From positions 2,418,001-2,482,000 of the forward strand of contig NC_047018.1 of NCBI RefSeq assembly GCF_902652985.1: a stretch of DNA of 64,000 bases, given 5' to 3'. The stretch's first letter is position 1; each line of letters starts with the position of its first letter. The notes beneath the pieces are model-generated. The model was not told the origin of the DNA. It saw nothing but the letters and a program-made list of their open reading frames with translations, and made no database searches. Origin of the DNA: Pecten maximus. Lineage: Eukaryota. The translations under genes and the position numbers were made by a program. Below, piece by piece: positions 1 through 12,500 of this stretch.

Positions 1-1170
1 GCAGTGTTAGGACTGGGACTTATAGCTAAAGAAGGGTGCAGTGTTAGGACTGGGACTTATAGCTAAAGAAGGGTGCAGTGTTAGGACTGGGACTTATACC
101 TAAAGAAGGGTGCAGTGTTAGGACTGGGACTTATACCTAAAGTGGGGTGCAGTGTTAGGACCGGGACTTATACCTAAAGAAGGGTGCAGTGTTAGAACTG
201 GGACTTATACCTAAAGAAGGGTGCAGTGTTAGAACTGGGACTTATACCTAAAGAAGGGTGCAGTGTTAGGACTGGGACTTATAGCTAAAGAAGGGTGCAG
301 TGTTAGGACTGGGACTTATAGCTAAAGTAGGGTTCAGTGTTTGGACTGGGACTTATAGCTAAAGTAGGGAGCAGTGTTAGGACTGGAACTTATACCTAAA
401 GAAGGGTGCAGTGTTAGGACCGGGACTTATAGCTAAAGTAGGGAGCAGTGTTAGGACTGGAACTTATAGCTAAAGAAGGGTGCAGTGTTTGGACTGGGAC
501 TTATAGCTAAAGTAGGGAGCAGTGTTAGGACTGGAACTTATACCTAAAGAAGGGTGCAGTGTTAGGACTGGGACTTATAGCTAAAGTAGGGAGCAGTGTT
601 AGGACTGGAACTTATACCTAAAGAAGGGTGCAGTGTTAGGACTGGGATTTATAGCTAAAGAAGGGTGCAGTGTTAGGACTGGGGACTTATAGCTACAGAA
701 GGGTGCAGTGTTAGGACTGGGACTTATACCTAAAGTGGGGTGCAGTGTTAGGACTGGGACTTATAGCTACAGAAGGGTGCAGTGTTAGGACTGGGACTTA
801 TACCTAAAGTGGGGTGCAGTGTTAGGACTGGGACGTATACCTAAAGTGGGGTGCAGTGTTAGGACTGGGACGTATACCTAAAGTGGGGTGCAGTGTTAGG
901 ACTGGGACGTATACCTAAAGTGGGGTGCAGTGTTAGGACTGGGACGTATACCTAAAGTGGGGTGCAGTGTTAGGACTGGGACGTATACCTAAAGTGGGGT
1001 GCAGTGTTAGGACTGGGACTTATAGCTAAAGTAGGGTTCAGTGTTAGGACTGGGACTTATAGCTAAAGTAGGGTTCAGTGTTAGGACTGGGACTTATAGC
1101 TAAAGTAGGGTTCAGTGTTAGGACTGGGACTTATAGCTAAAGTAGGGTTCAGTGTTAGGACTGGGACTTA
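1..1170. repeat. 37-bp minisatellite (GCAGTGTTAGGACTGGGACTTATAGCTAAAGAAGGGT), ~31 copies, intronic
   Basis: Direct tandem periodicity of 37 nt. The array ends at the GT donor (1171-1170, minus strand) of the adjacent exon. Confidence 0.97.
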
Positions 1171-1171
1171 C

Positions 1172-3470
1172 CTTTTCTGTATTGTAGAATGTTTGGGGTT
1201 CTCCACAGTACATCAACACAGAAGAAACACACAGTGGTACCTGGGGCCACATTCCTGGGGGGAAAACAAAGAACATACGAATTAGGAGGAACTGTGCTAC
1301 CATCTTAATAGATAAACTTTTTTGATATGATCATCTGATCAACTTTTTGTGAAAGTAAACAAATAAAACACAAAGTTTAGTCACAGATACAACCATCTAT
1401 TAAAGAATAGGAGAATAAACACTTCTATCAGTTCAATTGATAGATATTTTCTTGGCCATCCACAACAGTATTCATTACAGCTAGATCCTTCCTATTTGGT
1501 GAACATAATATTTTAATAAATTAATAATATTAATAAAGGCATCTCAACATCTCAGAATTGCTAGTCCATGCTATTTTTTTCCCCAGCTAAGGGAAAAAAA
1601 TGGAAAATAATGATTTCTAACTTAATTAAAAAAAAAAATTAAAACATAAGATAAGATTGCTGCTCAGGGATACTTGAGTAAACAATACAAAAAAATAAAC
1701 GTGATTTGAAGTACAACTCAAGATGACATTGGCATAGGAATTAAAAGTATCTACAAGTGATAAATATTGGCAGATATATATTTTTTTCTATCTTAATGTG
1801 ACAATTATGAGCAATGGCATTTTAATCAATTTACCCAAACTAAACATTCCTGGTTAAAATATTTTGTTTTCTTTAACAAAAACGTCAGGATCCACTTAAA
1901 TTTTTTTTTATTTAGAAACAGGAAAAACACAGAAAAAAAAGTATCTGAAATTACGTTTCCTTCATGAGCATGGTAGAGTTACGTCCGTCCTGTTTAGTTA
2001 ATCCAGTGAACGGATGAATATGCAAGTCTGTGCACTGGAGTGTCTTGGCATTGCTACCCTGTATCTCCCATTTCTCAGCATTGACGATAGTCTGTGTGTC
2101 CACACCAGCCTCGCGTGTATACCAGTCACCATGGTACTCCTCCGGTATTACACACGGCTGGTTAGGAACTTGTGAAACTGGGGAAAAAATAAAATAAAAC
2201 CTTTATTATATCTGATAAATGACAGTGATCACCATTGCCTGTTTTAACGTGGCGGCCCGCCACCCTCAGCTGGGTACCGCCACGCTTACACAACCAAATT
2301 CACTTGATCCGCCAGGCATGTAATTGTTACCTAACACCCCTATTTTGTACCGATTTCAAGCAGAAAACTGACCCGTTACTAGAGCGTCCGATACTCATTA
2401 CCTATGACCTGAATTGTTTTTACAGGTGAACGGCCTACATTATGTATATCAATTAATTATAACATATGTCAATAATTTCTCATGAAAACTGAATTTCAGA
2501 TTCAGATTCTTTATTTCCATGTGTTTCATTATGCATCCTTAATTTACACAGCATTTTAAATATAATATGGCCCATACCTTTGTCCGTAGCATAGGACTAT
2601 AATAAACGGTATTACCAATACATAGGACTATAATAAACGGTATTACCAATACATAGGACTATAATAAACGGTATTACCAATACATAGGACTATAATAAAC
2701 GGTATTACCAATACATATATAAGGACTATAATAAACAGTATTACCAATACATTTTTGCAATCTCAAGAGTACCACTTTTAGTTTCCATATTCAAAGCAAT
2801 CTTTATGATTTTTTTGGGGTCGGGGGGATAAAATATAGTCCACAAGTCTATTCAGTATGTGTATATGGCTAATATAACAATTTTATAGTGATATCGATAC
2901 ATTATATAGTAGGCAAAGTTTATGTACAATGTATTTGCCTAAATTGATGCCGACTCCCCAATCACTCCAGCTATTCTGAGGTAATGCTTGACATACAATT
3001 CAATTCATCAAAAGTCGAGTCAAAAACGTCATTCCAAAAGTAACTTTGTATACATATTCCACAAGAATTCGGCCTTGTTTAAGTTGTTTCGATGATCAGT
3101 ATGGGAACCAACATATCTGGTGGATAATGTCCGATATATATACGCAGCTGCAGCTATAGCTTATGTAGAATATGCAAGCAGTCAAAATCGCATTTTATTA
3201 AGATTTACCATTATACTTGATCAAATGATTTAATTTGTTCAATATAAGTGTTCCAAAGCCTGTGTTTCCGGAAGTATGATGAGTAACCGCGTAATGTTTA
3301 CGGGTATCTAAATAACAGGTGTTATAATGTCGTTGGATTAGATCCCTGTGTTTAAGATATACCTATAAAATATAGATTAGATGGATGTAAAACTCGCACT
3401 TACCTGCAGATCGCCATACAAGCATCAAGTTTAAACAAATCAGGGCTAGACCCTGCATACTGGGCGCCAT
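1172..3470 (-). CDS. Secreted Cys-containing uncharacterised protein, 5' exons only (resembles the invertebrate DUF7042/7043/7044-type family)
   Basis: Exons 3470-3404 (MAPSMQGLALICLNLMLVWRSA, signal-peptide-like), 2177-1955 (VSQVPNQPCVIPEEYHGDWYTREAG...NSTMLMKE) and 1254-1172 (TNVAPGTTVCFFCVDVLWRTPNILQYRK). All junctions are GT-AG with consistent phases 1, 2, 1. The family guess rests on recalled motifs C-x-x-P-x3-H-G-x-W and CxxC...R-x-x-N-I-L-Q-Y, not on a search. Confidence 0.8.
2590..2752. repeat. 31-bp tandem repeat, ~5 copies
   Basis: CATAGGACTATAATAAACGGTATTACCAATA repeated. Confidence 0.9.
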
Positions 3471-3693
3471 GTTTTCGTCTAATTCAAAATGGCGTTCTCA
3501 GGTGTGTACCGCAGGTAAAAGAGGCTCCGTGGGGGCAAACATGTTTAAGTGGAAATAATTGTTTTCTCACGGCGGAACTCGAAATTGAAAAAAGAGAGAA
3601 AACGACCAACTATAAAACTGTTTATGAACAATGTAACACTCTGATTTACAATATATCCATCATAATTTGTATGAAAAATACAATACCCTTAAT

Positions 3694-3733
3694 CAGAGAC
3701 ATATATACAGATATATATGTATATATGTCTCTG
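3694..3733. mobile_element. 40-bp palindromic micro-insertion / putative transposon excision footprint, 7-bp TSD CCTTAAT
   Basis: 16-bp perfect inverted repeat CAGAGACATATATACA with 8-nt spacer; CCTTAAT at 3687-3693 and 3734-3740. Confidence 0.85.
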
Positions 3734-3987
3734 CCTTAATGCGCCTCTTCGTAAATACCTTTTAGTTGAATAAGCGTAAGGGGAGAGAACTGTAGTCACA
3801 CGATTACGACAATGTTACGACATTGTCCGGTTTATATTATATCTGAAAGTGTTTTTTCATAGTTAAGGTTTATTTGATGGTTATATGTCCAATACTATGG
3901 TTGTATGTATGTGAAATGGCATGTGGTGGAGATAAGGCATTAATAAATTTAAGTAAAGAAGTGTGACGTAAGTTTGTTTATTTATAT

Positions 3988-4040
3988 CAGAGACCTATAT
4001 ACTAGTAATTAAATTCTATATATAGTAATATAGGTCTCTG
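3988..4040. mobile_element. 53-bp palindromic micro-insertion / footprint, 7-bp TSD TTTATAT
   Basis: 13-bp inverted repeat CAGAGACCTATAT with AT-rich filler; TTTATAT at 3981-3987 and 4041-4047. Confidence 0.85.
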
Positions 4041-4107
4041 TTTATATACGAAACCTGGATATACCCCTTATATTATTATATAATTTCGATATCATTGTAC
4101 GCGTAAG

Positions 4108-4127
4108 CAGGGACATAAACGTCCCTG
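4108..4127. mobile_element. 20-bp micro-insertion / footprint, 7-bp TSD GCGTAAG
   Basis: CAGGGAC-ATAAAC-GTCCCTG flanked by GCGTAAG at 4101-4107 and 4128-4134. Confidence 0.8.
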
Positions 4128-4387
4128 GCGTAAGCACAGAATTAATTTTATAAGTAAAACAAACAAACAAAAACAAAGAAGTGTACATTAACGTACTCAT
4201 TTCTTAATGTTTACGCCCTGGTTAAGAAATATATAAATATTACTTTACAATGCATAACTTTAACGACATCGTTTTTTTCACGCATCAAGAAGTTTTCGGA
4301 ACATTAAATGAGCAAAGTCATTATACAATATACCACTGCATTAGACGTTCTATCAATGTGTTATTATAATATATATATGTTCAGTAC

Positions 4388-5716
4388 AGGTCCTAACATT
4401 GGGATTATATGACAACACTTTACTACAGTGTAAACTGTCTATACCGACCACTTTACTGGTCCCAACATTGTAATAATATAACAGTCCTTTACTACAGTGA
4501 AAACTGTCTATACCGACCACTTTACTGATACTAACATTGTGATTATATGACAACCCTTTACTACAGTGAAAACTGTCTATACCGACCACTTTACTGGTCC
4601 TAACATTGGGATTATATGACAACACTTTACTACAGTGTAAACTGTCTATACGGACCACTTTACTGATACTAACATTGTGATTATATGACAACCCTTTACT
4701 ACTGTGTAAACTGTCTATACCGACCACTTTACTGGTCCTAACATTGGGATTATATGACAACACTTTACTACAGTGTAAACTGTCTATACCGACCACTTTA
4801 CTGGTCCTAACATTGGGATTATATGACAACACTTTACTACAGTGTTAACTGTCTATACCGACCACTTTACTGATCCTAACATTAGGATTATATGACAACA
4901 CTTTACTACAGTGTAAACTGTCTATACCGACCACTTTACTGGTCCTAAAATTCCGATTATATGACAGTCCTTTACTACAGTGTAAACTGTCTACACCGAC
5001 CATTTTACTGGTCCCAACATTGGGATTATATGACAGCACTTTAATTCAGTGTAAACTGTCTACACCGACCATTTTACTGGTCCCAACATTGGGATTATAT
5101 GACAGCACTTTAATTCAGTGTAAACTGTCTACACCGATCACTTTACTGGTCCTAACATTGGGATTATATGACAACACTTTATTACTGTGTAAACTGTCTA
5201 TACCGACCATTTTACTGGTCCCAACATTGGGATTATATGACAACCCTTTACTACAGTGTAAACTGTCTATACCGACCACTTTACTGGTCCTAACATTGTG
5301 ATTATATGACAGTCCTTTACTACAGTGTAAACTGTCTATACCGACCACTTTACTGGTCCTAACATTGGGATTATATGACAACACTTTATTACTGTGTAAA
5401 CTGTCTATACCGACCATTTTACTGGTCCCAACATTGGGATTATATGACAACCCTTTACTACAGTGTAAACTGTCTATACCGACCACTTTACTGGTCCTAA
5501 CATTGTGATTATATGACAGCACTTTACTTCAGTGTAAACTGTCTATACCGACCACTTTACTGGTCCTAACATTGTGATTATATGACAACACTTTAATACA
5601 GTGTAAACTGTCTATACTGACCACTTTACTGATCCTAACATTGTGATTATATGACAACCCTTTACTACAGTGTTAACTGTCTACACCGATCACTTTACTG
5701 GTCCTAACATTGTAAT
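4388..5716. repeat. 69-bp minisatellite, ~19 copies, in the divergent intergenic region
   Basis: Unit GGTCCTAACATTGGGATTATATGACAACACTTTACTACAGTGTAAACTGTCTATACCGACCACTTTACT; 23-aa periodicity in the ORF track. Confidence 0.96.
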
Positions 5717-5791
5717 TATCATAAATATGTTGACAACCCTCTGCATAGTGTAAACTTTTCGAACGCTGACTAACTTAACATTCAGTCTCAT

Positions 5792-5813
5792 CAGAGACGT
5801 ATACAAGTCTCTG
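5792..5813. mobile_element. 22-bp micro-insertion / footprint, 7-bp TSD GTCTCAT
   Basis: CAGAGAC-GTATACAA-GTCTCTG flanked by GTCTCAT at 5785-5791 and 5814-5820. Confidence 0.82.
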
Positions 5814-5847
5814 GTCTCATAAAATGTGTATTTTCAATACGCCTACG

Positions 5848-5875
5848 CAGAGACATATATAGATATATGTCTCTG
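5848..5875. mobile_element. 28-bp palindromic micro-insertion / footprint, 7-bp TSD GCCTACG
   Basis: CAGAGACATATAT-AG-ATATATGTCTCTG flanked by GCCTACG at 5841-5847 and 5876-5882. Confidence 0.87.
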
Positions 5876-6524
5876 GCCTACGATATGAGATGTATTTGGA
5901 CAGCCCATTAAACCGTCGATTTCTAAAATTCTAAGAAATTGCATCTATCTATGTGTGTCTAATCATATGTCACTGGTTGTACTTTTATCAAATACTTAAT
6001 TCAGATTTTTACCGAAACATCTGATTTTTTTTTTTATAGAACCGAAGCTTGGATATTGAAATCAACCACACAACCTGATATATGTCTCTGCCACAACTGA
6101 CAACAGTTGAGTGTATGACACTCACCTAGCTAATATCACATAATCAATTTTAGGCAATAAAATTTGAATCAGAAGAATAACTAAAGCTCTGATTATGATT
6201 TAGTTTACTGTTTGATAACGATCCTGCTTACAAATATTAATTAGTCATCAACTTGGCAACGTGTGGATCACATGACATTTCATAGGGGCACGTGTCGATG
6301 TTGATAAACATATAAAGCGACATCTAGTGGCAGGGCCGTGCTAATCTTTAAACCCAAAACAATAAACAAAATACAAAATTCCTATTGAAGAACAATATAA
6401 GAAATCTCTACTTAAGTAATCTACATATTAGGTTTTAAGAATTCCAGTATCCTGATATAGGTATTTATATCATGTACTAATCTCAATGATAGTATTTTTT
6501 TGCCATTTTTATAGAGACTACAAG

Positions 6525-9500
6525 ATGGCGGACGGGTAAGATGTCAAACACAAAGTGAAACAAATATTTACAAAATAGACCTTTGAACGTAACCGAAAAT
6601 CTGTTTTATGACTGTCGTAGTTTGACTTTTGATTGGAATATCAAATTTGCATGTTTCAGAAAAGATGACGGTGGTAGTTGGTGGGGGAGCTGGCTTCAGA
6701 CGGCCAAAGAAAAGGTATCCCTGCTGTTGCCTTACGTCATGTTCAGAACTGACATGATGGATAATGACTTACGAGCCATTGTTTTGTGTTGATTTGGCTG
6801 TAGAATATATATTGTTGTCTTCATTATCACACATTTCACTACTCCTCAGAATATCTTGATATACATTTAATATCATCAGGCATTGTAAAATGTACCTATA
6901 GATAAAATATTTGTCAAATATATTTGCGACATTCAATATTCGGGCAACGATTTAAAAAAATCGGACATGCGAAGTTCAATATTCAGACTACGGCATGCGA
7001 CGTTCAATAATGGCTTTGGTAAAAGTGTATTTACAAAGTTAGTTTTGATACTGCTGAAGGAATGCAGGGAAAAACAAAGACAACTCTAGTCTAGTTTAAT
7101 TCGCACAAATGTGTATTTATGGCTTTAGCAGTTGTAGGTGAAAAGGGCCATTAGGTAAAACATTAATTGTTGTAAAAGTTCAAGGAGTAGTAGTGTGCAG
7201 CCAGCCCGGATCGAACCCGCGACCCTTGGCTTACTGGTCCGCCGCTCTACCAACTGAGCTAAAGGGAAATTCCCCCTAGCCGGAAGCTAGAAGGCGACCA
7301 TACAACTATGTACAGTATTTACACTTAAAACCCGGCCTGCTACAATTGTGAATAGAATTATATACAGTGTATCTCAACAATGAAAAATTGATTCTTTTTA
7401 GGTGCAATTTGATTATCTTTATCTTTTCTCCCATTCCTTAAACTATTATAACTATATCAGATTAATATGGAATAGGAGCCTAAATCAAGATTTCTTTTTT
7501 CACTTATAATTTCTAAAGAAAATCAAAAATTGGTTGTCTGGCGATATATGAATTTTCCCCTAAGCAATAAATACCATCGCTGATATAAATAAAAAACCCA
7601 CTTGTCTGGATATGTGACCACTTGATAGTTTCACGCTATAACAAGGAAACAAACCCAAACATACTGCAGCTTCCCAAAACACACGAATCACAAGCCTGCA
7701 TCTCGCACACAGGGGGCTATCTTTAAATGACCTAAGCCATCGATAGGAAGTTAAAACAATACAAAACCAAACCAAAGCCAATTACCAAGTTTTAGAAAAT
7801 GATCTTATACTACAGTGATCTCTTATACCTCCTTCAATACGAGGGTAAACAAAGTTTGAGATGATGAAGAATGTTTTGTTCACATTGTTGCTGCTTTGCA
7901 GTGAGGATGTGTTGTAGCATATCAGTAATTGACATTATCAAGTTGTTTGGCATTGAATCAATCATTACACAGTCTAGTAGAGAGTAGTAATTAAGAGGGC
8001 ATGTAATACTACATGTTTATGCTCTAATTCGTCTAAACGGTAAATAATAAAGTCATGTAACAGCTATTTTAATAAGATTAGTTTAAATGCAGCCTGACAG
8101 TTAGCATTTTGTCTTATCTTAATTTACACATGTAGACTTAAACTCATCAAATCATGAGTTAGAAGTGTGAAGACTTGTGGTGATATTTTCAGTCTGTCTC
8201 TGCTATCGAGATGGTGAAGAAGGACCTAGCCGACTATACATGTACCATGCAGCAGGACACCACTCAGGTGATGGCAATAACATCGGAGAAAATGAAGGAA
8301 ATACAGGTAAAGTAATCAAATTTATTGATAGAATGGAAAAGGCAAATTGTTTGTGCCCTACAGATTTTAAAATATAAACACTTGGTAAACTGAACTTATT
8401 GTTCTTCAGTGGGAGCTGAGCATATTACTGGTATATGTTTTTAAAAAAGATGTGTGATCACTGAGTCATAGGTTAATCTGTATTTGATATCAGTCACGAT
8501 TAAAAAAAAATATGTCAATAAGGTATACACAAAACGTGTCATCGCAGGATGTTTGGGATAGACCACCTTTATCAAATCCATTAGTAACTGTAGATATACA
8601 GATGGTTCATACTATAGCCTATTTCAATTTATTTTACATGATACATTATATAAATATGGTACATAGCAATGAAACACAAATAATGGAAAGACAGTTTATG
8701 ACAAATGCCCTGTTCTGTCCTGAAATCTCTGACATTGATATAGTCACCTAGCCCCTGTCATGGATAAGGAGGAATTAAAGAACTGCCATCCAGTGTTAAA
8801 TCTTCCGTTCCTTTCCAAGACCTTGGAGAAGATTGTAGCCTAGCGTTTAGAGGCTCCTCTCCATGCAAACTTGTCAGGACCACTTGCTAACGGCCTACTG
8901 CATGGGACATCCCACTGAGATGACCCTCTTTCGTGATATAGCTGCCACCCTGGATAACAAGTGTCAGTTCCTACCATGCTTGATCTGTCCTCTGCATTTG
9001 TCACTCTTTACTAGCCGTCACGATCACTACGATCAGAGACAGAGTCCTGTTAAGTGTTCCAAGCCCTTGTACTGTGACTTATGGTAACTGGTGAAATGTA
9101 GCGTCCTCTTTGTGGAACAGATTACCACCTGTACCAGGAAGACCAAAACCCTGGCCAAATTAAAGAAGGTTAAAACTCACATGTCTATGTGTGGTTATAA
9201 GAGTCTCTTGCATTCTCCTGTACATGGCCTAACTGTTGACTCAATAGCATTCTCCTGTACATGGCCTAACTGTTGACTCAATAGCATTCTCCTGTACATG
9301 GCCTAACTGTTAACTCAATAGCATTCTCCTGTACATGGCCTAACTGTTGACTCAATAGCATTCTCCTGTACATGGCCTAACTGTTGACTCAATAGCATTC
9401 TCCTGTACATGGCCTAACTGTTGACTCAATAGCATTCTCCTGTACATGGCCTAACTGTTAACTCAATAGCATTCTCCTGTACATGGCCTAATTGTTGACT

Positions 9501-12500
9501 CAATAGCATTCTCCTGTACATGGCCTAACTGTTGACTCAATAGCATTGTCCTGTACATGGCCTAACTGTTGACTCAATAGCATTCTCCTGTACATGGCCT
9601 AACTGTCGACTCAATAGCATTCTCCTGTACATGGCCTAACTGTTGACTCAATAGCATTCTCCTGTACATGGCCTAACTGTTGACTCAATAGCATTCTCCT
9701 GTACATGGCCTAACTGTCGACTCAATAGCATTCTCCTGTACATGGCCTAACTGTTGACTCAATAGCATTCTCCTGTACATGGCCTAACTGTTGACTCAAT
9801 AGCATTCTCCTGTACATGGCCTAACTGCTCGACTCAATAGCATTCTCCTGTACATGGCCTAACTGTTGACTCAAAATCATCCTCCTGTACATGGCCTAAC
9901 TGTTGACTCAATAGCATCCTCCTGTACATGGCCTAACTGTTGACTCAATAGCATCCTCCTGTACATGGCCTAACTGTTGACTCAATAGCATTCTCCTGTA
10001 CATGGCCTAACTGCTCGACTCAATAGCATTCTCCTGTACATGGCCTAACTGTTGACTCAATAGCATTCTCCTGTACATGGCCTAACTGTTGACTCAATAG
10101 CATCCTCCTGTACATGGCCTAACTGTGGACTCAATAGCATCCTCCTGTACATGGCCTAACTGTTGACTCAATAGCATCCTCCTGTACATGGCCTAACTGT
10201 TGACTCAATAGCATCCTCCTGTACATGGCCTAACTGTTGACTCAATAGCATCCTCCTGTACATGGCCTAACTGTTGACTCAATAGCATCCTCCTGTACAT
10301 GGCCTAACTGTTGACTCAATAGCATCCTCCTGTACATGGCCTAACTGTCGACTCAATAGCATCCTCCTGTACATGGCCTAACTGTCGACTCAATAGCATC
10401 CTCCTGTACATGGCCTAACTGTTGACTCAATAGCATCCTCCTGTACATGGCCTAACTGTTGACTCAATAGCATCCTCCTGTACATGGCCTAACTGTTGAC
10501 TCAATAGCATCCTCCTGTACATGGCCTAACTGTTGACTCAATAGCATCCTCCTGTACATGGCCTAACTGTTGACTCAATAGCATCCTCCTGTACATGGCC
10601 TAACTGTTGACTCAATAGCATCCTCCTGTACATGGCCTAACTGTTGACTCAATAGCATTCTCCTGTACATGGCCTAACTGTTGACTCAATAGCATCCTCC
10701 TGTACATGGCCTAACTGTTGACTCAATAGCATTCTCCTGTACATGGCCTAACTGTTGACTCAATAGCATCCTCCTGTACATGGCCTAACTGTTGACTCAA
10801 TAGCATCCTCCTGTACATGGCCTAACTGTTGACTCAATAGCATTCTCCTGTACATGGCCTAACTGTTGACTCAATAGCATCCTCCTGTACATGGCCTAAC
10901 TGTTGACTCAATAGCATTCTCCTGTACATGGCCTAACTGTTGACTCAATAGCATTCTCCTGTACATGGCCTAACTGTTGACTCAATAGCATTCTCCTGTA
11001 CATGGCCTAACTGTTGACTCAATAGCATTCTCCTGTACATGGCCTAACTGTTGACTCAATAGCATTCTCCTGTACATGGCCTAACTGTTGACTCAACAGC
11101 ATTCTCCTGTACATGGCCTAACTGTTGACTCAACAGCATTCTCCTGTACATGGCCTAACTGTTGACTCAATAGCATTCTCCTGTACATGGCCTAACTGTT
11201 GACTCAATAGCATTCTCCTGTACATGGCCTAACTGTTGACTCAATAGCATTCTCCTGTACATGGCCTAACTGTTGACTCAATAGCATTCTCCTGTACATG
11301 GCCTAACTGTTGACTCAATAGCATTCTCCTGTACATGGCCTAACTGTTGACTCAATAGCATTCTCCTGTACATGGCCTAACTGTTGACTCAATAGCATTC
11401 TCCTGTACATGGCCTAACTGTTGACTCAACAGCATTCTCCTGTACATGGCCTAACTGTTGACTCAACAGCATTCTCCTGTACATGGCCTAACTGTTGACT
11501 CAATAGCATTCTCCTGTACATGGCCTAACTGTTGACTCAATAGCATTCTCCTGTACATGGCCTAACTGTTGACTCAATAGCATTCTCCTGTACATGGCCT
11601 AACTGTTGACTCAATAGCATTCTCCTGTACATGGCCTAACTGCTTGACTCAATATAGGTTATATAGCTTATATATGTTAATGTGTACATTGTGTAACACT
11701 TGAAATAAGACGTTTTATTATGTTATGTAATGTGAAGCGCATTAATTTTACAATTAGATAGTGCTCTATATAAATATTGTATACAGTATTATTATTATAA
11801 TACCAGACTCAGAAAGCATGTCTGTCTGTGTTGTACTTATACCCTCCAACTCAACGTAGACTAGTGTTTATCAATGCATGATACATTTGTGTTGTGTTTA
11901 TCAATTTTAATTCAAATTATAATCCTAAAAAATCATACTGTGAACAAGATATACATTCCAGCAATAAATCCCCTCAGCTTTGACCATCATCACGTACGGC
12001 TTAAAACAATGTTTCAATATAGTAAGATGGTTTAATGGTCAATGGCCTGGTATTCTGAACAAGTTTATGTGAACATAAAAAACTAACTGTATCCCAAAGA
12101 GTAATATTGTGAAATTTTACTTTTTTACTTAGACAAAAGAAGGTGCTCCACGCTATGGATTTGCGACATTTCTGGAAGACCTAACAAAGTCACTGGTAGT
12201 AGAGGCAGAAGACAAGTATGATAAACCGATACCGGTACCTTCTACTGATCCAATGTTTGACAGGGCCAAGGTAATTCACATTCCACTTCTACTTTGGCAA
12301 GACACATATTTCTCTGGTCAAACATAATTGTAAGATACAAAGCCTACTGTACTGCCACAATAGAGCTGACATCACCTCACAGATATATATATATCACAGA
12401 TATATCACCTCATCTAGATCCTCATCAATGTTCAATTAAGGATTTCTTCATCCTTTGGTAGAATTACCTTATTTTTAATTATCACATACATACCTTCCAT

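What the first reader, a model, noticed from the sequence alone, without database searches (positions are those of the whole stretch)
3687..6097. Promoter hotspot of ultra-short palindromic insertions with 7-bp TSDs: candidate P-superfamily excision footprints
Seen: five separate 20-53 bp elements (3694-3733, 3988-4040, 4108-4127, 5792-5813, 5848-5875). Each begins CAG(A/G)GAC, ends GTC(T/C)CTG, has 7-16 bp inverted arms around variable AT-rich filler, and is flanked by a different exact 7-bp direct repeat (CCTTAAT, TTTATAT, GCGTAAG, GTCTCAT, GCCTACG). A sixth decayed copy is at 6075-6090 (ACACAAC/CCACAAC). All lie in the ~3 kb between two divergent start codons, and I saw none elsewhere in the window by eye. 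Known: P-superfamily elements (including Galileo) have CANRG termini and 7-8 bp TSDs. Drosophila P cleaves with a 17-nt stagger, so end-joining leaves up to ~17 bp of each TIR plus filler between the TSDs, and P prefers promoter regions. Inference: these are too short to be MITEs and look like scars of repeated insertion and excision by several related P-like families (arms differ: ...GACATAT, ...GACCTAT, ...GACGTAT, CAGGGAC). That would be a fossil record of promoter-targeted transposition that could serve as a marker of open germline promoters and that keeps rewriting promoter sequence.
Basis: partly seen in the sequence, partly recalled or inferred. Interest (0 to 1): 0.9.

Follow-up and report, generated by a model that had tools for sequence, protein, structure and literature searches.

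The report
Transposon excision scars between two genes
Six tiny palindromes in the 3 kb between two king-scallop genes are most likely scars left where cut-and-paste transposons jumped in and out again. Thousands more across the genome keep about 17 bases of each transposon end, as the fruit-fly P element does when it excises.

Summary
Five 20-53 bp palindromes with CAG(A/G)GAC ends and exact 7-bp target-site duplications, plus one decayed copy, lie between the start of BSDC1 and a divergent gene. Nothing similar occurs in the other 61 kb of the window.

The genome is Pecten maximus. It holds about 3,300 short CAGAGAC elements and about 400 CAGGGAC ones, in several families. Long elements (0.7-4.6 kb) with the same ends exist, and the one read in full has a 7-bp duplication. 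In families A and B the short elements match those long ends for 17 (A: 17-18) bases and then stop: A falls from 295 arms at 17 nt to 18 at 19 nt, B from 1,049 to 8. Family C is ambiguous between 16 and 19. The commonest lengths are those expected from joining two 17-nt overhangs.

One scar interrupts a repeat whose other copies carry a single copy of its 7-mer. Scars cluster, and they sit in CpG-rich, promoter-like DNA.

Excision footprints of P-like transposons is the best reading. The transposase source was not found, so superfamily membership is inferred.

This scan had already noted the same phenomenon on other DNA of this genome (s1-786403, s1-794548, s1-792070).

The parts
3687..3740 (.). 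E1: 40-bp family-A scar (3694-3733) between two copies of CCTTAAT. It consists of 17 nt of the left end, 8 nt of AT filler and 15 nt of the right end.
   Evidence: The arms match the 20-bp inverted repeat of the long element L047 for 17 nt.
3981..4047 (.). E2: 53-bp family-B scar (3988-4040) between two copies of TTTATAT. It consists of 17 nt of the left end, 23 nt of AT-rich filler and 13 nt of the right end. It lies inside a high-copy repeat.
   Evidence: The long-end sequence is in L049. 23 other copies of the host repeat hold a single TTTATAT.
4101..4134 (.). E3: 20-bp heavily trimmed scar of the CAGGGAC family (4108-4127) between two copies of GCGTAAG.
   Evidence: The family has 543 copies genome-wide against 145 for the control.
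5785..5820 (.). E4: 22-bp family-C scar (5792-5813) between two copies of GTCTCAT. The left 12 nt are joined to the right end through a shared TATA.
   Evidence: The long left end was read in L050/L051.
5841..5882 (.). E5: 28-bp family-A2 scar (5848-5875) between two copies of GCCTACG. The same 28-mer occurs at other loci with other 7-mers.
   Evidence: L001, L003, L014.
6068..6097 (.). E6: probable one-sided scar. It keeps 13 nt of a family-A right end (6075-6090) between ACACAAC and CCACAAC.
   Evidence: No left arm is present, and the repeat matches at 6 of 7 positions.
3788..4051 (.). One unit of a high-copy repeat (3788-3987 plus 4048-4051), interrupted by E2. The whole 264-bp block is absent from one haplotype in two public DNA runs.
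   Evidence: depth in the hundreds, a joint 3787->4052 at single-copy depth in X1 and X2, and loose ends reading TATATACGAAAC. Also.
3402..3470 (-). First coding exon of the minus-strand neighbour. It is signal-peptide-like, with ATG at 3470 and GT donor at 3403-3402, and a GCCATTTT motif at 3486-3493.
   Evidence: The stretch 3441-3525 is conserved in a contig of a second organism (X11).
6522..6535 (+). Start of BSDC1: AAGATGGCGG motif with ATG at 6525, and exon 1 ending at 6535.
   Evidence: The N-terminus reads MADG-KDDGGSWWGSWLQTAKEK; I recognised it as BSDC1 from memory, not from a search.
4385..5719 (.). 69-bp satellite of 19 copies that separates the two groups of scars. It is not part of the scars.

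Best explanation
Each short palindrome is the scar of one complete insertion-and-excision cycle of a cut-and-paste DNA transposon.

Insertion duplicated 7 bp of the target. This is shown by the exact repeats and by the paralogous empty site of E2.

On excision, the transposase cut the transferred strand at the element tip and the other strand about 17 nt inside the element. Each flank therefore kept a 17-nt 3' overhang of transposon end. This step is inferred from the arm-length cliff and the modal lengths.

End joining then fused the two overhangs. It used tip or internal microhomology, trimming, or short A/T-rich and templated filler. The result is duplication - up to 17 nt - junction - up to 17 nt - duplication.

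Several related families have hit this 2.4-kb interval independently: A and A2, B, C and the CAGGGAC family. The families share positions 1-7, and A, A2, B and the left end of C also share 9-14. The three long ends that were read (A, B, C) share a subterminal G-R-G-A-T-T-S-G motif. The interval is promoter-like, unmethylated-looking DNA between two divergent genes, and such DNA appears to be a preferred target genome-wide.

The 7-bp duplication, the CAGAG/CAGGG ends and the 17-nt stagger point to the P/THAP9/Galileo superfamily. The genome carries several young P-type transposase families, but none was tied to these ends.
For: (1) Real insertions. Ten of 15 random genome copies have exact 7-bp duplications and the rest have 1-2 mismatches. 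All five in the window are exact. E2 interrupts a repeat whose other 23 copies have one TTTATAT.

(2) Parents exist. L047 is a 1,343-bp element with a 20-bp inverted repeat and TTATCAT on both sides. The listed 19-mer and 20-mer hits mostly pair up 0.7-3.9 kb apart, and the exact 19-mer has 597 ends in all. Family B has 183 ends in pairs of 4.0-4.6 kb. Family C long ends were read at two loci.

(3) Cliff at 17 nt. In family B, 1,049 short-element arms reach 17 nt and 8 reach 19. In family A, 295 reach 17 nt and 18 reach 19, several of those being templated duplicates. In family C, 195 reach 16 nt and 2 clearly reach 20. The arms stop inside the 20-23-bp inverted repeat, not at its end.

(4) Modal lengths are predictable. 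For B, 32, 29 and 27 bp are exactly what results when the TA tip of a 17-nt overhang anneals to successive TA dinucleotides of its partner, and the 17+n+17 series (34, 35, 36, 38 bp) is also seen. For C, 33 bp (17+16) makes up about 57% of loci, and 24 bp arises by a TATAC microhomology. The CAGGGAC family also has a recurrent 33-bp form.

(5) The length distribution is sharply bounded. In a family-A subset, 435 elements have gaps of 0-30 nt, 14 have 31-60 and 2 have 61-90.

(6) Fillers copy nearby end sequence.

(7) Clustering. About 13 of 50 and 14 of 65 listed elements on contig C1 have a neighbour within 5 kb, where about 1 is expected, and the clusters mix families. Two of 15 random loci have a second element within 350 bp.

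(8) Promoter proxy. AGATGGCG lies within 600 bp of the element in 5 of 15 random loci. CpG observed/expected has a median of 0.73 there against 0.42 for window tiles.

(9) The 17-nt stagger and the promoter preference are documented for the Drosophila P element (PMC7776569). Seven-bp duplications are documented for the P-superfamily element Galileo (PMC2775673).

(10) P-type transposases with the GTP-binding insertion domain are present in young multi-copy families.
Against: No element bounded by these ends was shown to encode a transposase. None of the 44 P-type transposase hits coincides with a listed long A or B element. The middle 1.1 kb of one 4.5-kb B element has no open frame. The one P-type copy whose boundaries could be estimated (F1) has no CAGAGAC ends.

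No locus was seen with a full-length element in one haplotype and a scar in another.

Identical short forms recur at many loci: the 33-bp C form at about 40% of listed loci and the 32-bp B form at about 20%. A self-mobile element would give the same pattern.

In family C the two mirror-image 33-bp products are about 4:1 rather than 1:1, which is unexplained.

Family A fits an 18-nt overhang at least as well as 17. A few arms (about 1-3%) keep 19-23 nt.

The promoter bias rests on 15 loci and crude proxies, with the window as the only background.
Confidence: 0.66

Rival explanations
1. They are excision footprints as described, but the families belong to a superfamily other than P whose cleavage chemistry is not yet known and happens to leave about 17 nt.
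For: No P-type transposase was found within these ends. Cleavage geometry is unknown for many eukaryotic superfamilies (my own knowledge). CAGAG ends also resemble hobo/Hermes-type hAT ends (my own knowledge).
Against: The 7-bp duplication is exact and never 8 bp, which does not fit hAT. As far as I know, a 17-nt stagger has been described only for P (PMC7776569, PMC10983969). P-type transposases are young and multi-copy in this genome.
Confidence: 0.17
2. The 20-50 bp palindromes are themselves mobile micro-MITEs that are cut out and pasted by a transposase supplied in trans. The recurrent identical forms are amplified copies.
For: Identical 33-, 32-, 30- and 28-bp forms occur at many loci with different duplications. 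Variants such as the A-centred 33-mer recur, as a propagating subfamily would. The two mirror-image 33-bp family-C products are about 4:1 rather than the 1:1 expected from symmetrical repair.
Against: The lengths form a nested series of truncated arms, with variation concentrated at the junction rather than spread as point mutations. In family C about 10 of 17 single changes are at the centre base. The arms stop 2-6 nt inside the parents' inverted repeat (with 62, 63, 81, 82), so a minimal-end requirement does not explain the size. The recurrent forms are the ones predicted by microhomology. With a 17-nt stagger, an element of 34 bp or less would have no duplex left after excision (inference). 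One-sided remnants such as E6 cannot be mobile.
Confidence: 0.12
3. They are extreme internal-deletion derivatives made by interrupted gap repair of a resident long element, not by end joining after excision.
For: A few longer derivatives (73-114 bp) keep 50-90 nt of one subterminal region of the L047-type element, so internal deletion does occur.
Against: Interrupted gap repair gives breakpoints anywhere. Here more than 95% of elements fall under about 56 bp, with a cliff at 17 nt.
Confidence: 0.04

Closest known systems
Drosophila melanogaster P element excision footprints (17-nt staggered donor cleavage)
   Same: The duplication is kept on both sides. Up to about 17 nt of each inverted repeat remains, joined with microhomology or filler. 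Promoters and open chromatin are preferred (PMC7776569).
   Different: The duplication is 7 bp, not 8. The end sequence is unrelated. The scars are seen here as thousands of natural germline scars in a mollusc rather than as laboratory revertants. The transposase was not identified. Family A may be cut at 18 nt.
Galileo (P superfamily, Drosophila)
   Same: 7-bp target-site duplications and several co-existing subfamilies with near-identical tips (PMC2775673).
   Different: Galileo has very long foldback-like inverted repeats and a GTAGTAC target consensus. The elements here have 20-23-bp repeats and no evident target consensus. That paper reports no footprints.
MITEs, including tandem-repeat-containing MITEs of bivalves (pearl, DTC84)
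   Same: The long family-A elements are non-coding, have terminal inverted repeats and carry a variable number of internal repeats of about 210 bp.
   Different: pearl/DTC84 have an AA duplication and short subterminal repeats and may be Helitron-like (PMC3879986). Here the duplication is 7 bp and the inverted repeat is 20 bp. The 20-50-bp elements are far below MITE size and are heterogeneous at the junction.
hAT elements (hobo, Hermes)
   Same: Ends begin CAGAG (my own knowledge).
   Different: hAT makes 8-bp duplications, and hairpin formation on the flanks leaves footprints of only a few bases. Neither fits here.

Membership tests
P superfamily (P element / THAP9 / Galileo) | 7-8 bp target-site duplication | tested here: met
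   Exactly 7 bp in 5 of 5 window elements, in 10 of 15 genome copies (the rest have 1-2 mismatches) and in the 1,343-bp element L047. The flanking bases rule out 8 bp. Galileo gives 7 bp (PMC2775673).
P superfamily (P element / THAP9 / Galileo) | Termini of the form CANRG | tested here: met
   Ends read CAGAG or CAGGG. The rule itself is recalled from the Repbase classification and could not be checked in the paper library.
P superfamily (P element / THAP9 / Galileo) | Staggered donor cleavage about 17 nt inside each end | tested here: met
   Indirect evidence only. There is an arm-length cliff at 17 nt (B 1,049 to 8; A 295 to 18), and the modal lengths are those predicted for 17-nt overhangs. 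There is no biochemistry.
P superfamily (P element / THAP9 / Galileo) | Autonomous copy bounded by the same ends and encoding a THAP / RNase H / GTP-binding-insertion transposase | tested here: inconclusive
   P-type transposases exist: 44 hits and at least 5 young families, three of them with the GTP-binding domain. None coincides with the listed long A or B elements, and their flanks show no such ends. Further flanks could not be fetched.
P superfamily (P element / THAP9 / Galileo) | Insertion preference for promoters / open chromatin | tested here: met
   This is a typical property rather than a defining one. The window cluster lies between two 5' ends. The AGATGGCG motif is within 600 bp in 5 of 15 random loci. 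CpG o/e is 0.73 against 0.42. Clusters mix families. These are proxy measures on a small sample.
hAT superfamily | 8-bp duplication; flank hairpins that leave footprints of a few bases | tested here: not met
   The duplication is 7 bp and the footprints keep up to 17 nt per end.
Self-mobile MITE | Homogeneous non-coding copies that transpose as units, with complete inverted repeats | tested here: not met
   The arms are truncated inside the 20-23-bp inverted repeat and the junctions are heterogeneous. Mobility itself cannot be tested here.
pearl/DTC84-type tandem-repeat MITEs of bivalves | AA duplication, short terminal/subterminal inverted motif, core repeats plus microsatellite | tested here: not met
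   L047 has a 7-bp duplication, a 20-bp terminal inverted repeat and no microsatellite module (compared with PMC3879986).

The most novel reading that the evidence does not exclude
The king scallop germline hosts a recently active P-type transposon system. Its 17-nt staggered cut is shared with Drosophila and so would be ancestral to the P/THAP9 superfamily. Its thousands of scars would form a natural, base-resolution record of which promoters were open in the germline. The scars also rewrite promoter sequence and seed new tandem arrays.
Probability: 0.4. Interest if true: 0.75.

Novelty: new member of a known kind. Interest (0 to 1): 0.6.

Why it matters
As far as I know, the long staggered cut has been mapped directly only for the fly P element. 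If that cut explains these scars, a mollusc genome gives thousands of natural replicates showing that the geometry is conserved far outside insects. It also shows how germline end joining resolves two 17-nt overhangs: by tip microhomology, trimming or templated filler.

Scars of 20-50 bp are long enough to recognise, so past transposition can be counted even after the element has left. That allows a test of promoter targeting and of selection for excision at promoters. It also flags small palindromic insertions as a recurrent source of promoter variation. At least one here lies in a block that is still polymorphic.

For annotation, these elements should not be called MITEs or chance palindromes.

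Tried and rejected
(1) Chance or simple AT palindromes. Rejected: reversed-pattern controls gave 0-164 hits against 435-3,339 real ones, and the 7-bp repeats are exact.

(2) PF12017 (the short P-element family) in the genome gave no hit, but it also failed in every control genome, so this is uninformative.

(3) CAGRGAC words near 30 P-type transposase loci are internal conserved positions, not ends.

(4) F1 transposase copy. The boundaries estimated from a second copy (L046 554-7219) show no inverted repeat or CAGAGAC end. The one candidate repeat pair is AT-rich chance.

(5) A longer 25-nt 'A3' end guessed from 73-114-bp elements had only 3 hits. Those elements turned out to be rare internal-deletion derivatives of the L047 type.

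(6) A supposed 10.4-kb B element at C1:26666-37116 is not one. The left hit is a decayed short element, and only the right hit is a true long end.

(7) The middle 1.1 kb of a 4.5-kb B element has no open frame over 117 aa and no Pfam match.

(8) L047 shares only its internal satellite with the F1 locus.

(9) Read laying covered 3300-4384 only. Contigs break at the E1 palindrome, so E1 polymorphism is unresolved.

(11) A literature search for the CANRG rule found nothing relevant.
Full report
**Observation**

Five elements start CAG(A/G)GAC and end GTC(T/C)CTG, and each is flanked by its own exact 7-bp direct repeat. They are E1 3694-3733, E2 3988-4040, E3 4108-4127, E4 5792-5813 and E5 5848-5875. 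A sixth, at 6075-6090, has only a right arm and a 6/7 repeat.

I scanned the whole window for any 7-bp direct repeat enclosing a sequence with inverted ends of 6 bp or more. Only these five were returned, apart from hits inside tandem arrays. Of the 15 CAGRGAC words in the 64 kb, 11 lie in this interval.

The setting is also as stated. On the minus strand, an ATG at 3470 opens a signal-peptide-like exon with a GT donor at 3403-3402. On the plus strand, BSDC1 starts at ATG 6525 inside an AAGATGGCGG motif. A 69-bp satellite at 4385-5719 splits the scars into two groups, each 220-710 bp upstream of one start codon.

**Genome context**

The window is C4:2418001-2482000 of a 918-Mb assembly. A transposase gene from that assembly is 100% identical to a Pecten maximus protein.

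Short elements with the same ends are dispersed genome-wide:
- CAGAGAC-N(0-30)-GTCTCTG: 3,339 copies, against 164 for the reversed-pattern control.
- The CAGGGAC version: 543 copies, against 145.

In 15 loci cut out for one subfamily, ten have exact 7-bp duplications and the other five have one or two mismatches.

The elements fall into families by the bases after position 7:
- A: ...ATATATACAG
- A2: ...ATATATAGAG
- B: ...CTATATACTA
- C: an asymmetric family with left ...GTATATACC and right ...TTGTATATCA
- the CAGGGAC family

The window holds members of all of these.

**Are they real insertions?**

Public contigs were laid on 3300-4384. They show that 3788-3987 plus 4048-4051 is one unit of a high-copy repeat, and that E2 with its second TTTATAT sits inside it. 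Other copies read ...TTTATAT-ACGAAAC without interruption. The assembly holds 23 such uninterrupted junctions, against 0-2 for the control.

This is a paralogous empty site. It shows that TTTATAT was duplicated when something inserted there.

The whole 264-bp block (repeat plus E2) is skipped by single-copy-depth contigs in two runs, so this stretch is still polymorphic.

**Do long elements share the ends?**

Yes. The 14-mer CAGAGACNTATATA occurs 6,246 times, but only 3,400 of those have a partner end within 30 nt. Position pairs in that list led to L047.

L047 is a 1,343-bp element bounded by TTATCAT on both sides. It has a 20-bp terminal inverted repeat and an internal satellite of about 210 bp.

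- **Family A.** The exact 19-mer occurs 597 times. In the listed rows its hits, like those of the 20-mer, lie almost entirely in plus/minus pairs 0.7-3.9 kb apart. The sizes step by about 210 bp.
- **Family B.** A long end read in L049 gave a 23-nt terminus. It occurs 183 times, mostly in pairs 4.0-4.6 kb apart.
- **Family C.** The same long left end was read at two loci with different flanks, and it occurs 21 times.

All three long ends share a G-R-G-A-T-T-S-G motif at about positions 17-25 (17-24 in families A and C, 18-25 in B), next to the point where the short arms stop.

**The cap on arm length**

With the parent ends known, the short elements can be measured against them.

| Family | Arms reaching the shorter length | Arms reaching the longer length |
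|---|---|---|
| B | 1,049 at 17 nt | 8 at 19 nt |
| A | 295 at 17 nt | 18 at 19 nt (several are templated duplicates of the tip) |
| C | 195 at 16 nt | 2 clearly at 20 nt |

The arms therefore stop inside the 20-23-bp inverted repeat, not at its inner edge.

Total lengths are sharply bounded. In a family-A subset, 435 elements have gaps of 0-30 nt, 14 have 31-60 and 2 have 61-90, and several of the longer ones are two adjacent elements.

The few 73-114-bp elements keep 50-90 nt of one subterminal region of the L047 type. Ordinary internal deletion does occur, but it is rare.

**Modal lengths**

- **Family B.** A 17-nt overhang ends in TA. The three commonest lengths (32, 29 and 27 bp) are exactly what results if that TA anneals to the first, second and third TA of the partner overhang. 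A 17+n+17 series (34, 35, 36 and 38 bp) is also present. The 36-bp product expected from blunt joining of 18-nt overhangs is absent from the first 100 listed matches.
- **Family C.** The 33-bp form makes up about 57% of listed loci. It equals 17+16: both overhangs end in A, which cannot pair, so one is lost. The 24-bp form uses a TATAC microhomology, and single changes concentrate on the centre base.
- **CAGGGAC family.** It has a recurrent 33-bp form of the same kind.
- **Family A.** The tip has no self-complementary bases, and this family is the most heterogeneous. Its forms (36, 35, 34, 31, 30 and 28 bp) fit overhangs of 17-18 nt.
- **Fillers.** They are A/T-rich or copy the nearby tip.

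**Mechanism**

These features match what is established for the Drosophila P element. Its transposase cuts 17 nt inside each end, which leaves 17-nt single-stranded extensions, and it prefers promoters and replication origins (PMC7776569; PMC10983969). Seven-bp duplications are known in the P superfamily from Galileo (PMC2775673).

I therefore read each short element as the product of insertion, staggered excision and end joining. Two steps are shown: the insertion with its duplication, and the existence of parents with the same ends. Two are inferred: the stagger and the joining route.

An element of 34 bp or less would have no duplex left after two 17-nt staggered cuts. That argues against the short forms being mobile themselves, but it is also an inference.

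**Hotspot and promoters**

On contig C1, about 13 of 50 listed elements have a neighbour within 5 kb, and in another list about 14 of 65. About one is expected in each case. The clusters mix families. Two of 15 random loci have a second element within 350 bp.

Mixed families argue for a property of the target rather than local hopping from one donor.

As a proxy for promoters, I looked at the 15 random family-A loci:
- AGATGGCG, the motif at the BSDC1 start, lies within 600 bp of the element in five of the 15. About 0.04 per locus is expected by chance.
- The flanks have a median CpG observed/expected of 0.73, against 0.42 for tiles of this window and 0.45 for transposase loci (Mann-Whitney p = 4e-4).

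The sample is small and the background is limited, so I regard the promoter bias as supported but not established.

**What is missing**

The genome has at least 44 P-type transposase matches in five or more young families. Three of those families carry the GTP-binding insertion domain. None coincides with a listed long A or B element, and their 1.5-kb flanks lack these ends.

The one copy with estimated boundaries has no such ends. The middle of a 4.5-kb B element is non-coding.

I could not go further. No site was seen with a long element in one haplotype and a scar in another. The 4:1 excess of one of the two mirror-image 33-bp products in family C is unexplained.

**Comparison and novelty**

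P-element footprints are a textbook laboratory observation. I found no report of thousands of natural P-type scars, of their use to infer cleavage geometry outside insects, or of promoter hotspots of scars in a mollusc. The library is limited to open papers.

The long family-A elements resemble the tandem-repeat MITEs of bivalves in layout, but not in their ends or duplication.

This scan had already noted the same phenomenon in other windows of this genome, and one follow-up reached the same conclusion. My tests were run independently of it.

**Verdict**

I class it as a new member of a known kind, of moderate to high interest.

Noticed in passing
window 3788-4051: A high-copy repeat unit of about 204-233 bp, also abundant in a second organism's run. 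It is present here as a single unit and is missing from one haplotype in two public DNA runs (joint 3787->4052).
   Followed up: partly
window 3667-3736: One contig of run X5 has 33 letters where the window has 70 (E1 plus flank). That is neither the reference scar nor a clean empty site. The letters were not shown, so the allele is unresolved.
   Followed up: no
window 1-1170, 4385-5719 and 9210-11654: Three tandem arrays flank or split the intergenic region: 37-bp units (32 copies), 69-bp units (19 copies) and a different 37-bp unit (66 copies, 98% alike).
   Followed up: no
window about 7185-7270, minus strand: A tRNA-like stretch (T-arm and acceptor-like sequence) that ARAGORN does not call as a tRNA. 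It is probably a tRNA-derived SINE fragment in BSDC1 intron 2.
   Followed up: no
G000 C1:11141027-11142024; C6:46604397-46604884; C1:31846285-31846852; C3:42458821-42459158: Tandem arrays built from scar sequence: a 17-19-bp-period array of the family-A tip, a 65-bp-period array carrying the 33-bp C scar, and a 32-bp-period array carrying a 24-bp CAGGGAC scar. Scars seem to seed satellites.
   Followed up: no
L047 349-1195 and L046 104-941: The satellite of about 210 bp inside the family-A long elements also forms free arrays at dozens of loci. One array lies 2.3 kb upstream of a P-type transposase gene.
   Followed up: partly
L016-L046 (G000 loci): There are at least five young P-type transposase families (copies 92-99.9% alike). 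Two of them match only the RNase H N-terminal domain model. One family has two copies in inverted orientation 4.6 kb apart on C6.
   Followed up: partly
L047 37-44, L049 (reverse) and L050/L051 about positions 17-25 of each end: The long ends of families A, B and C share a G-R-G-A-T-T-S-G motif just inside the inferred cleavage point. It may be a transposase-binding site.
   Followed up: no
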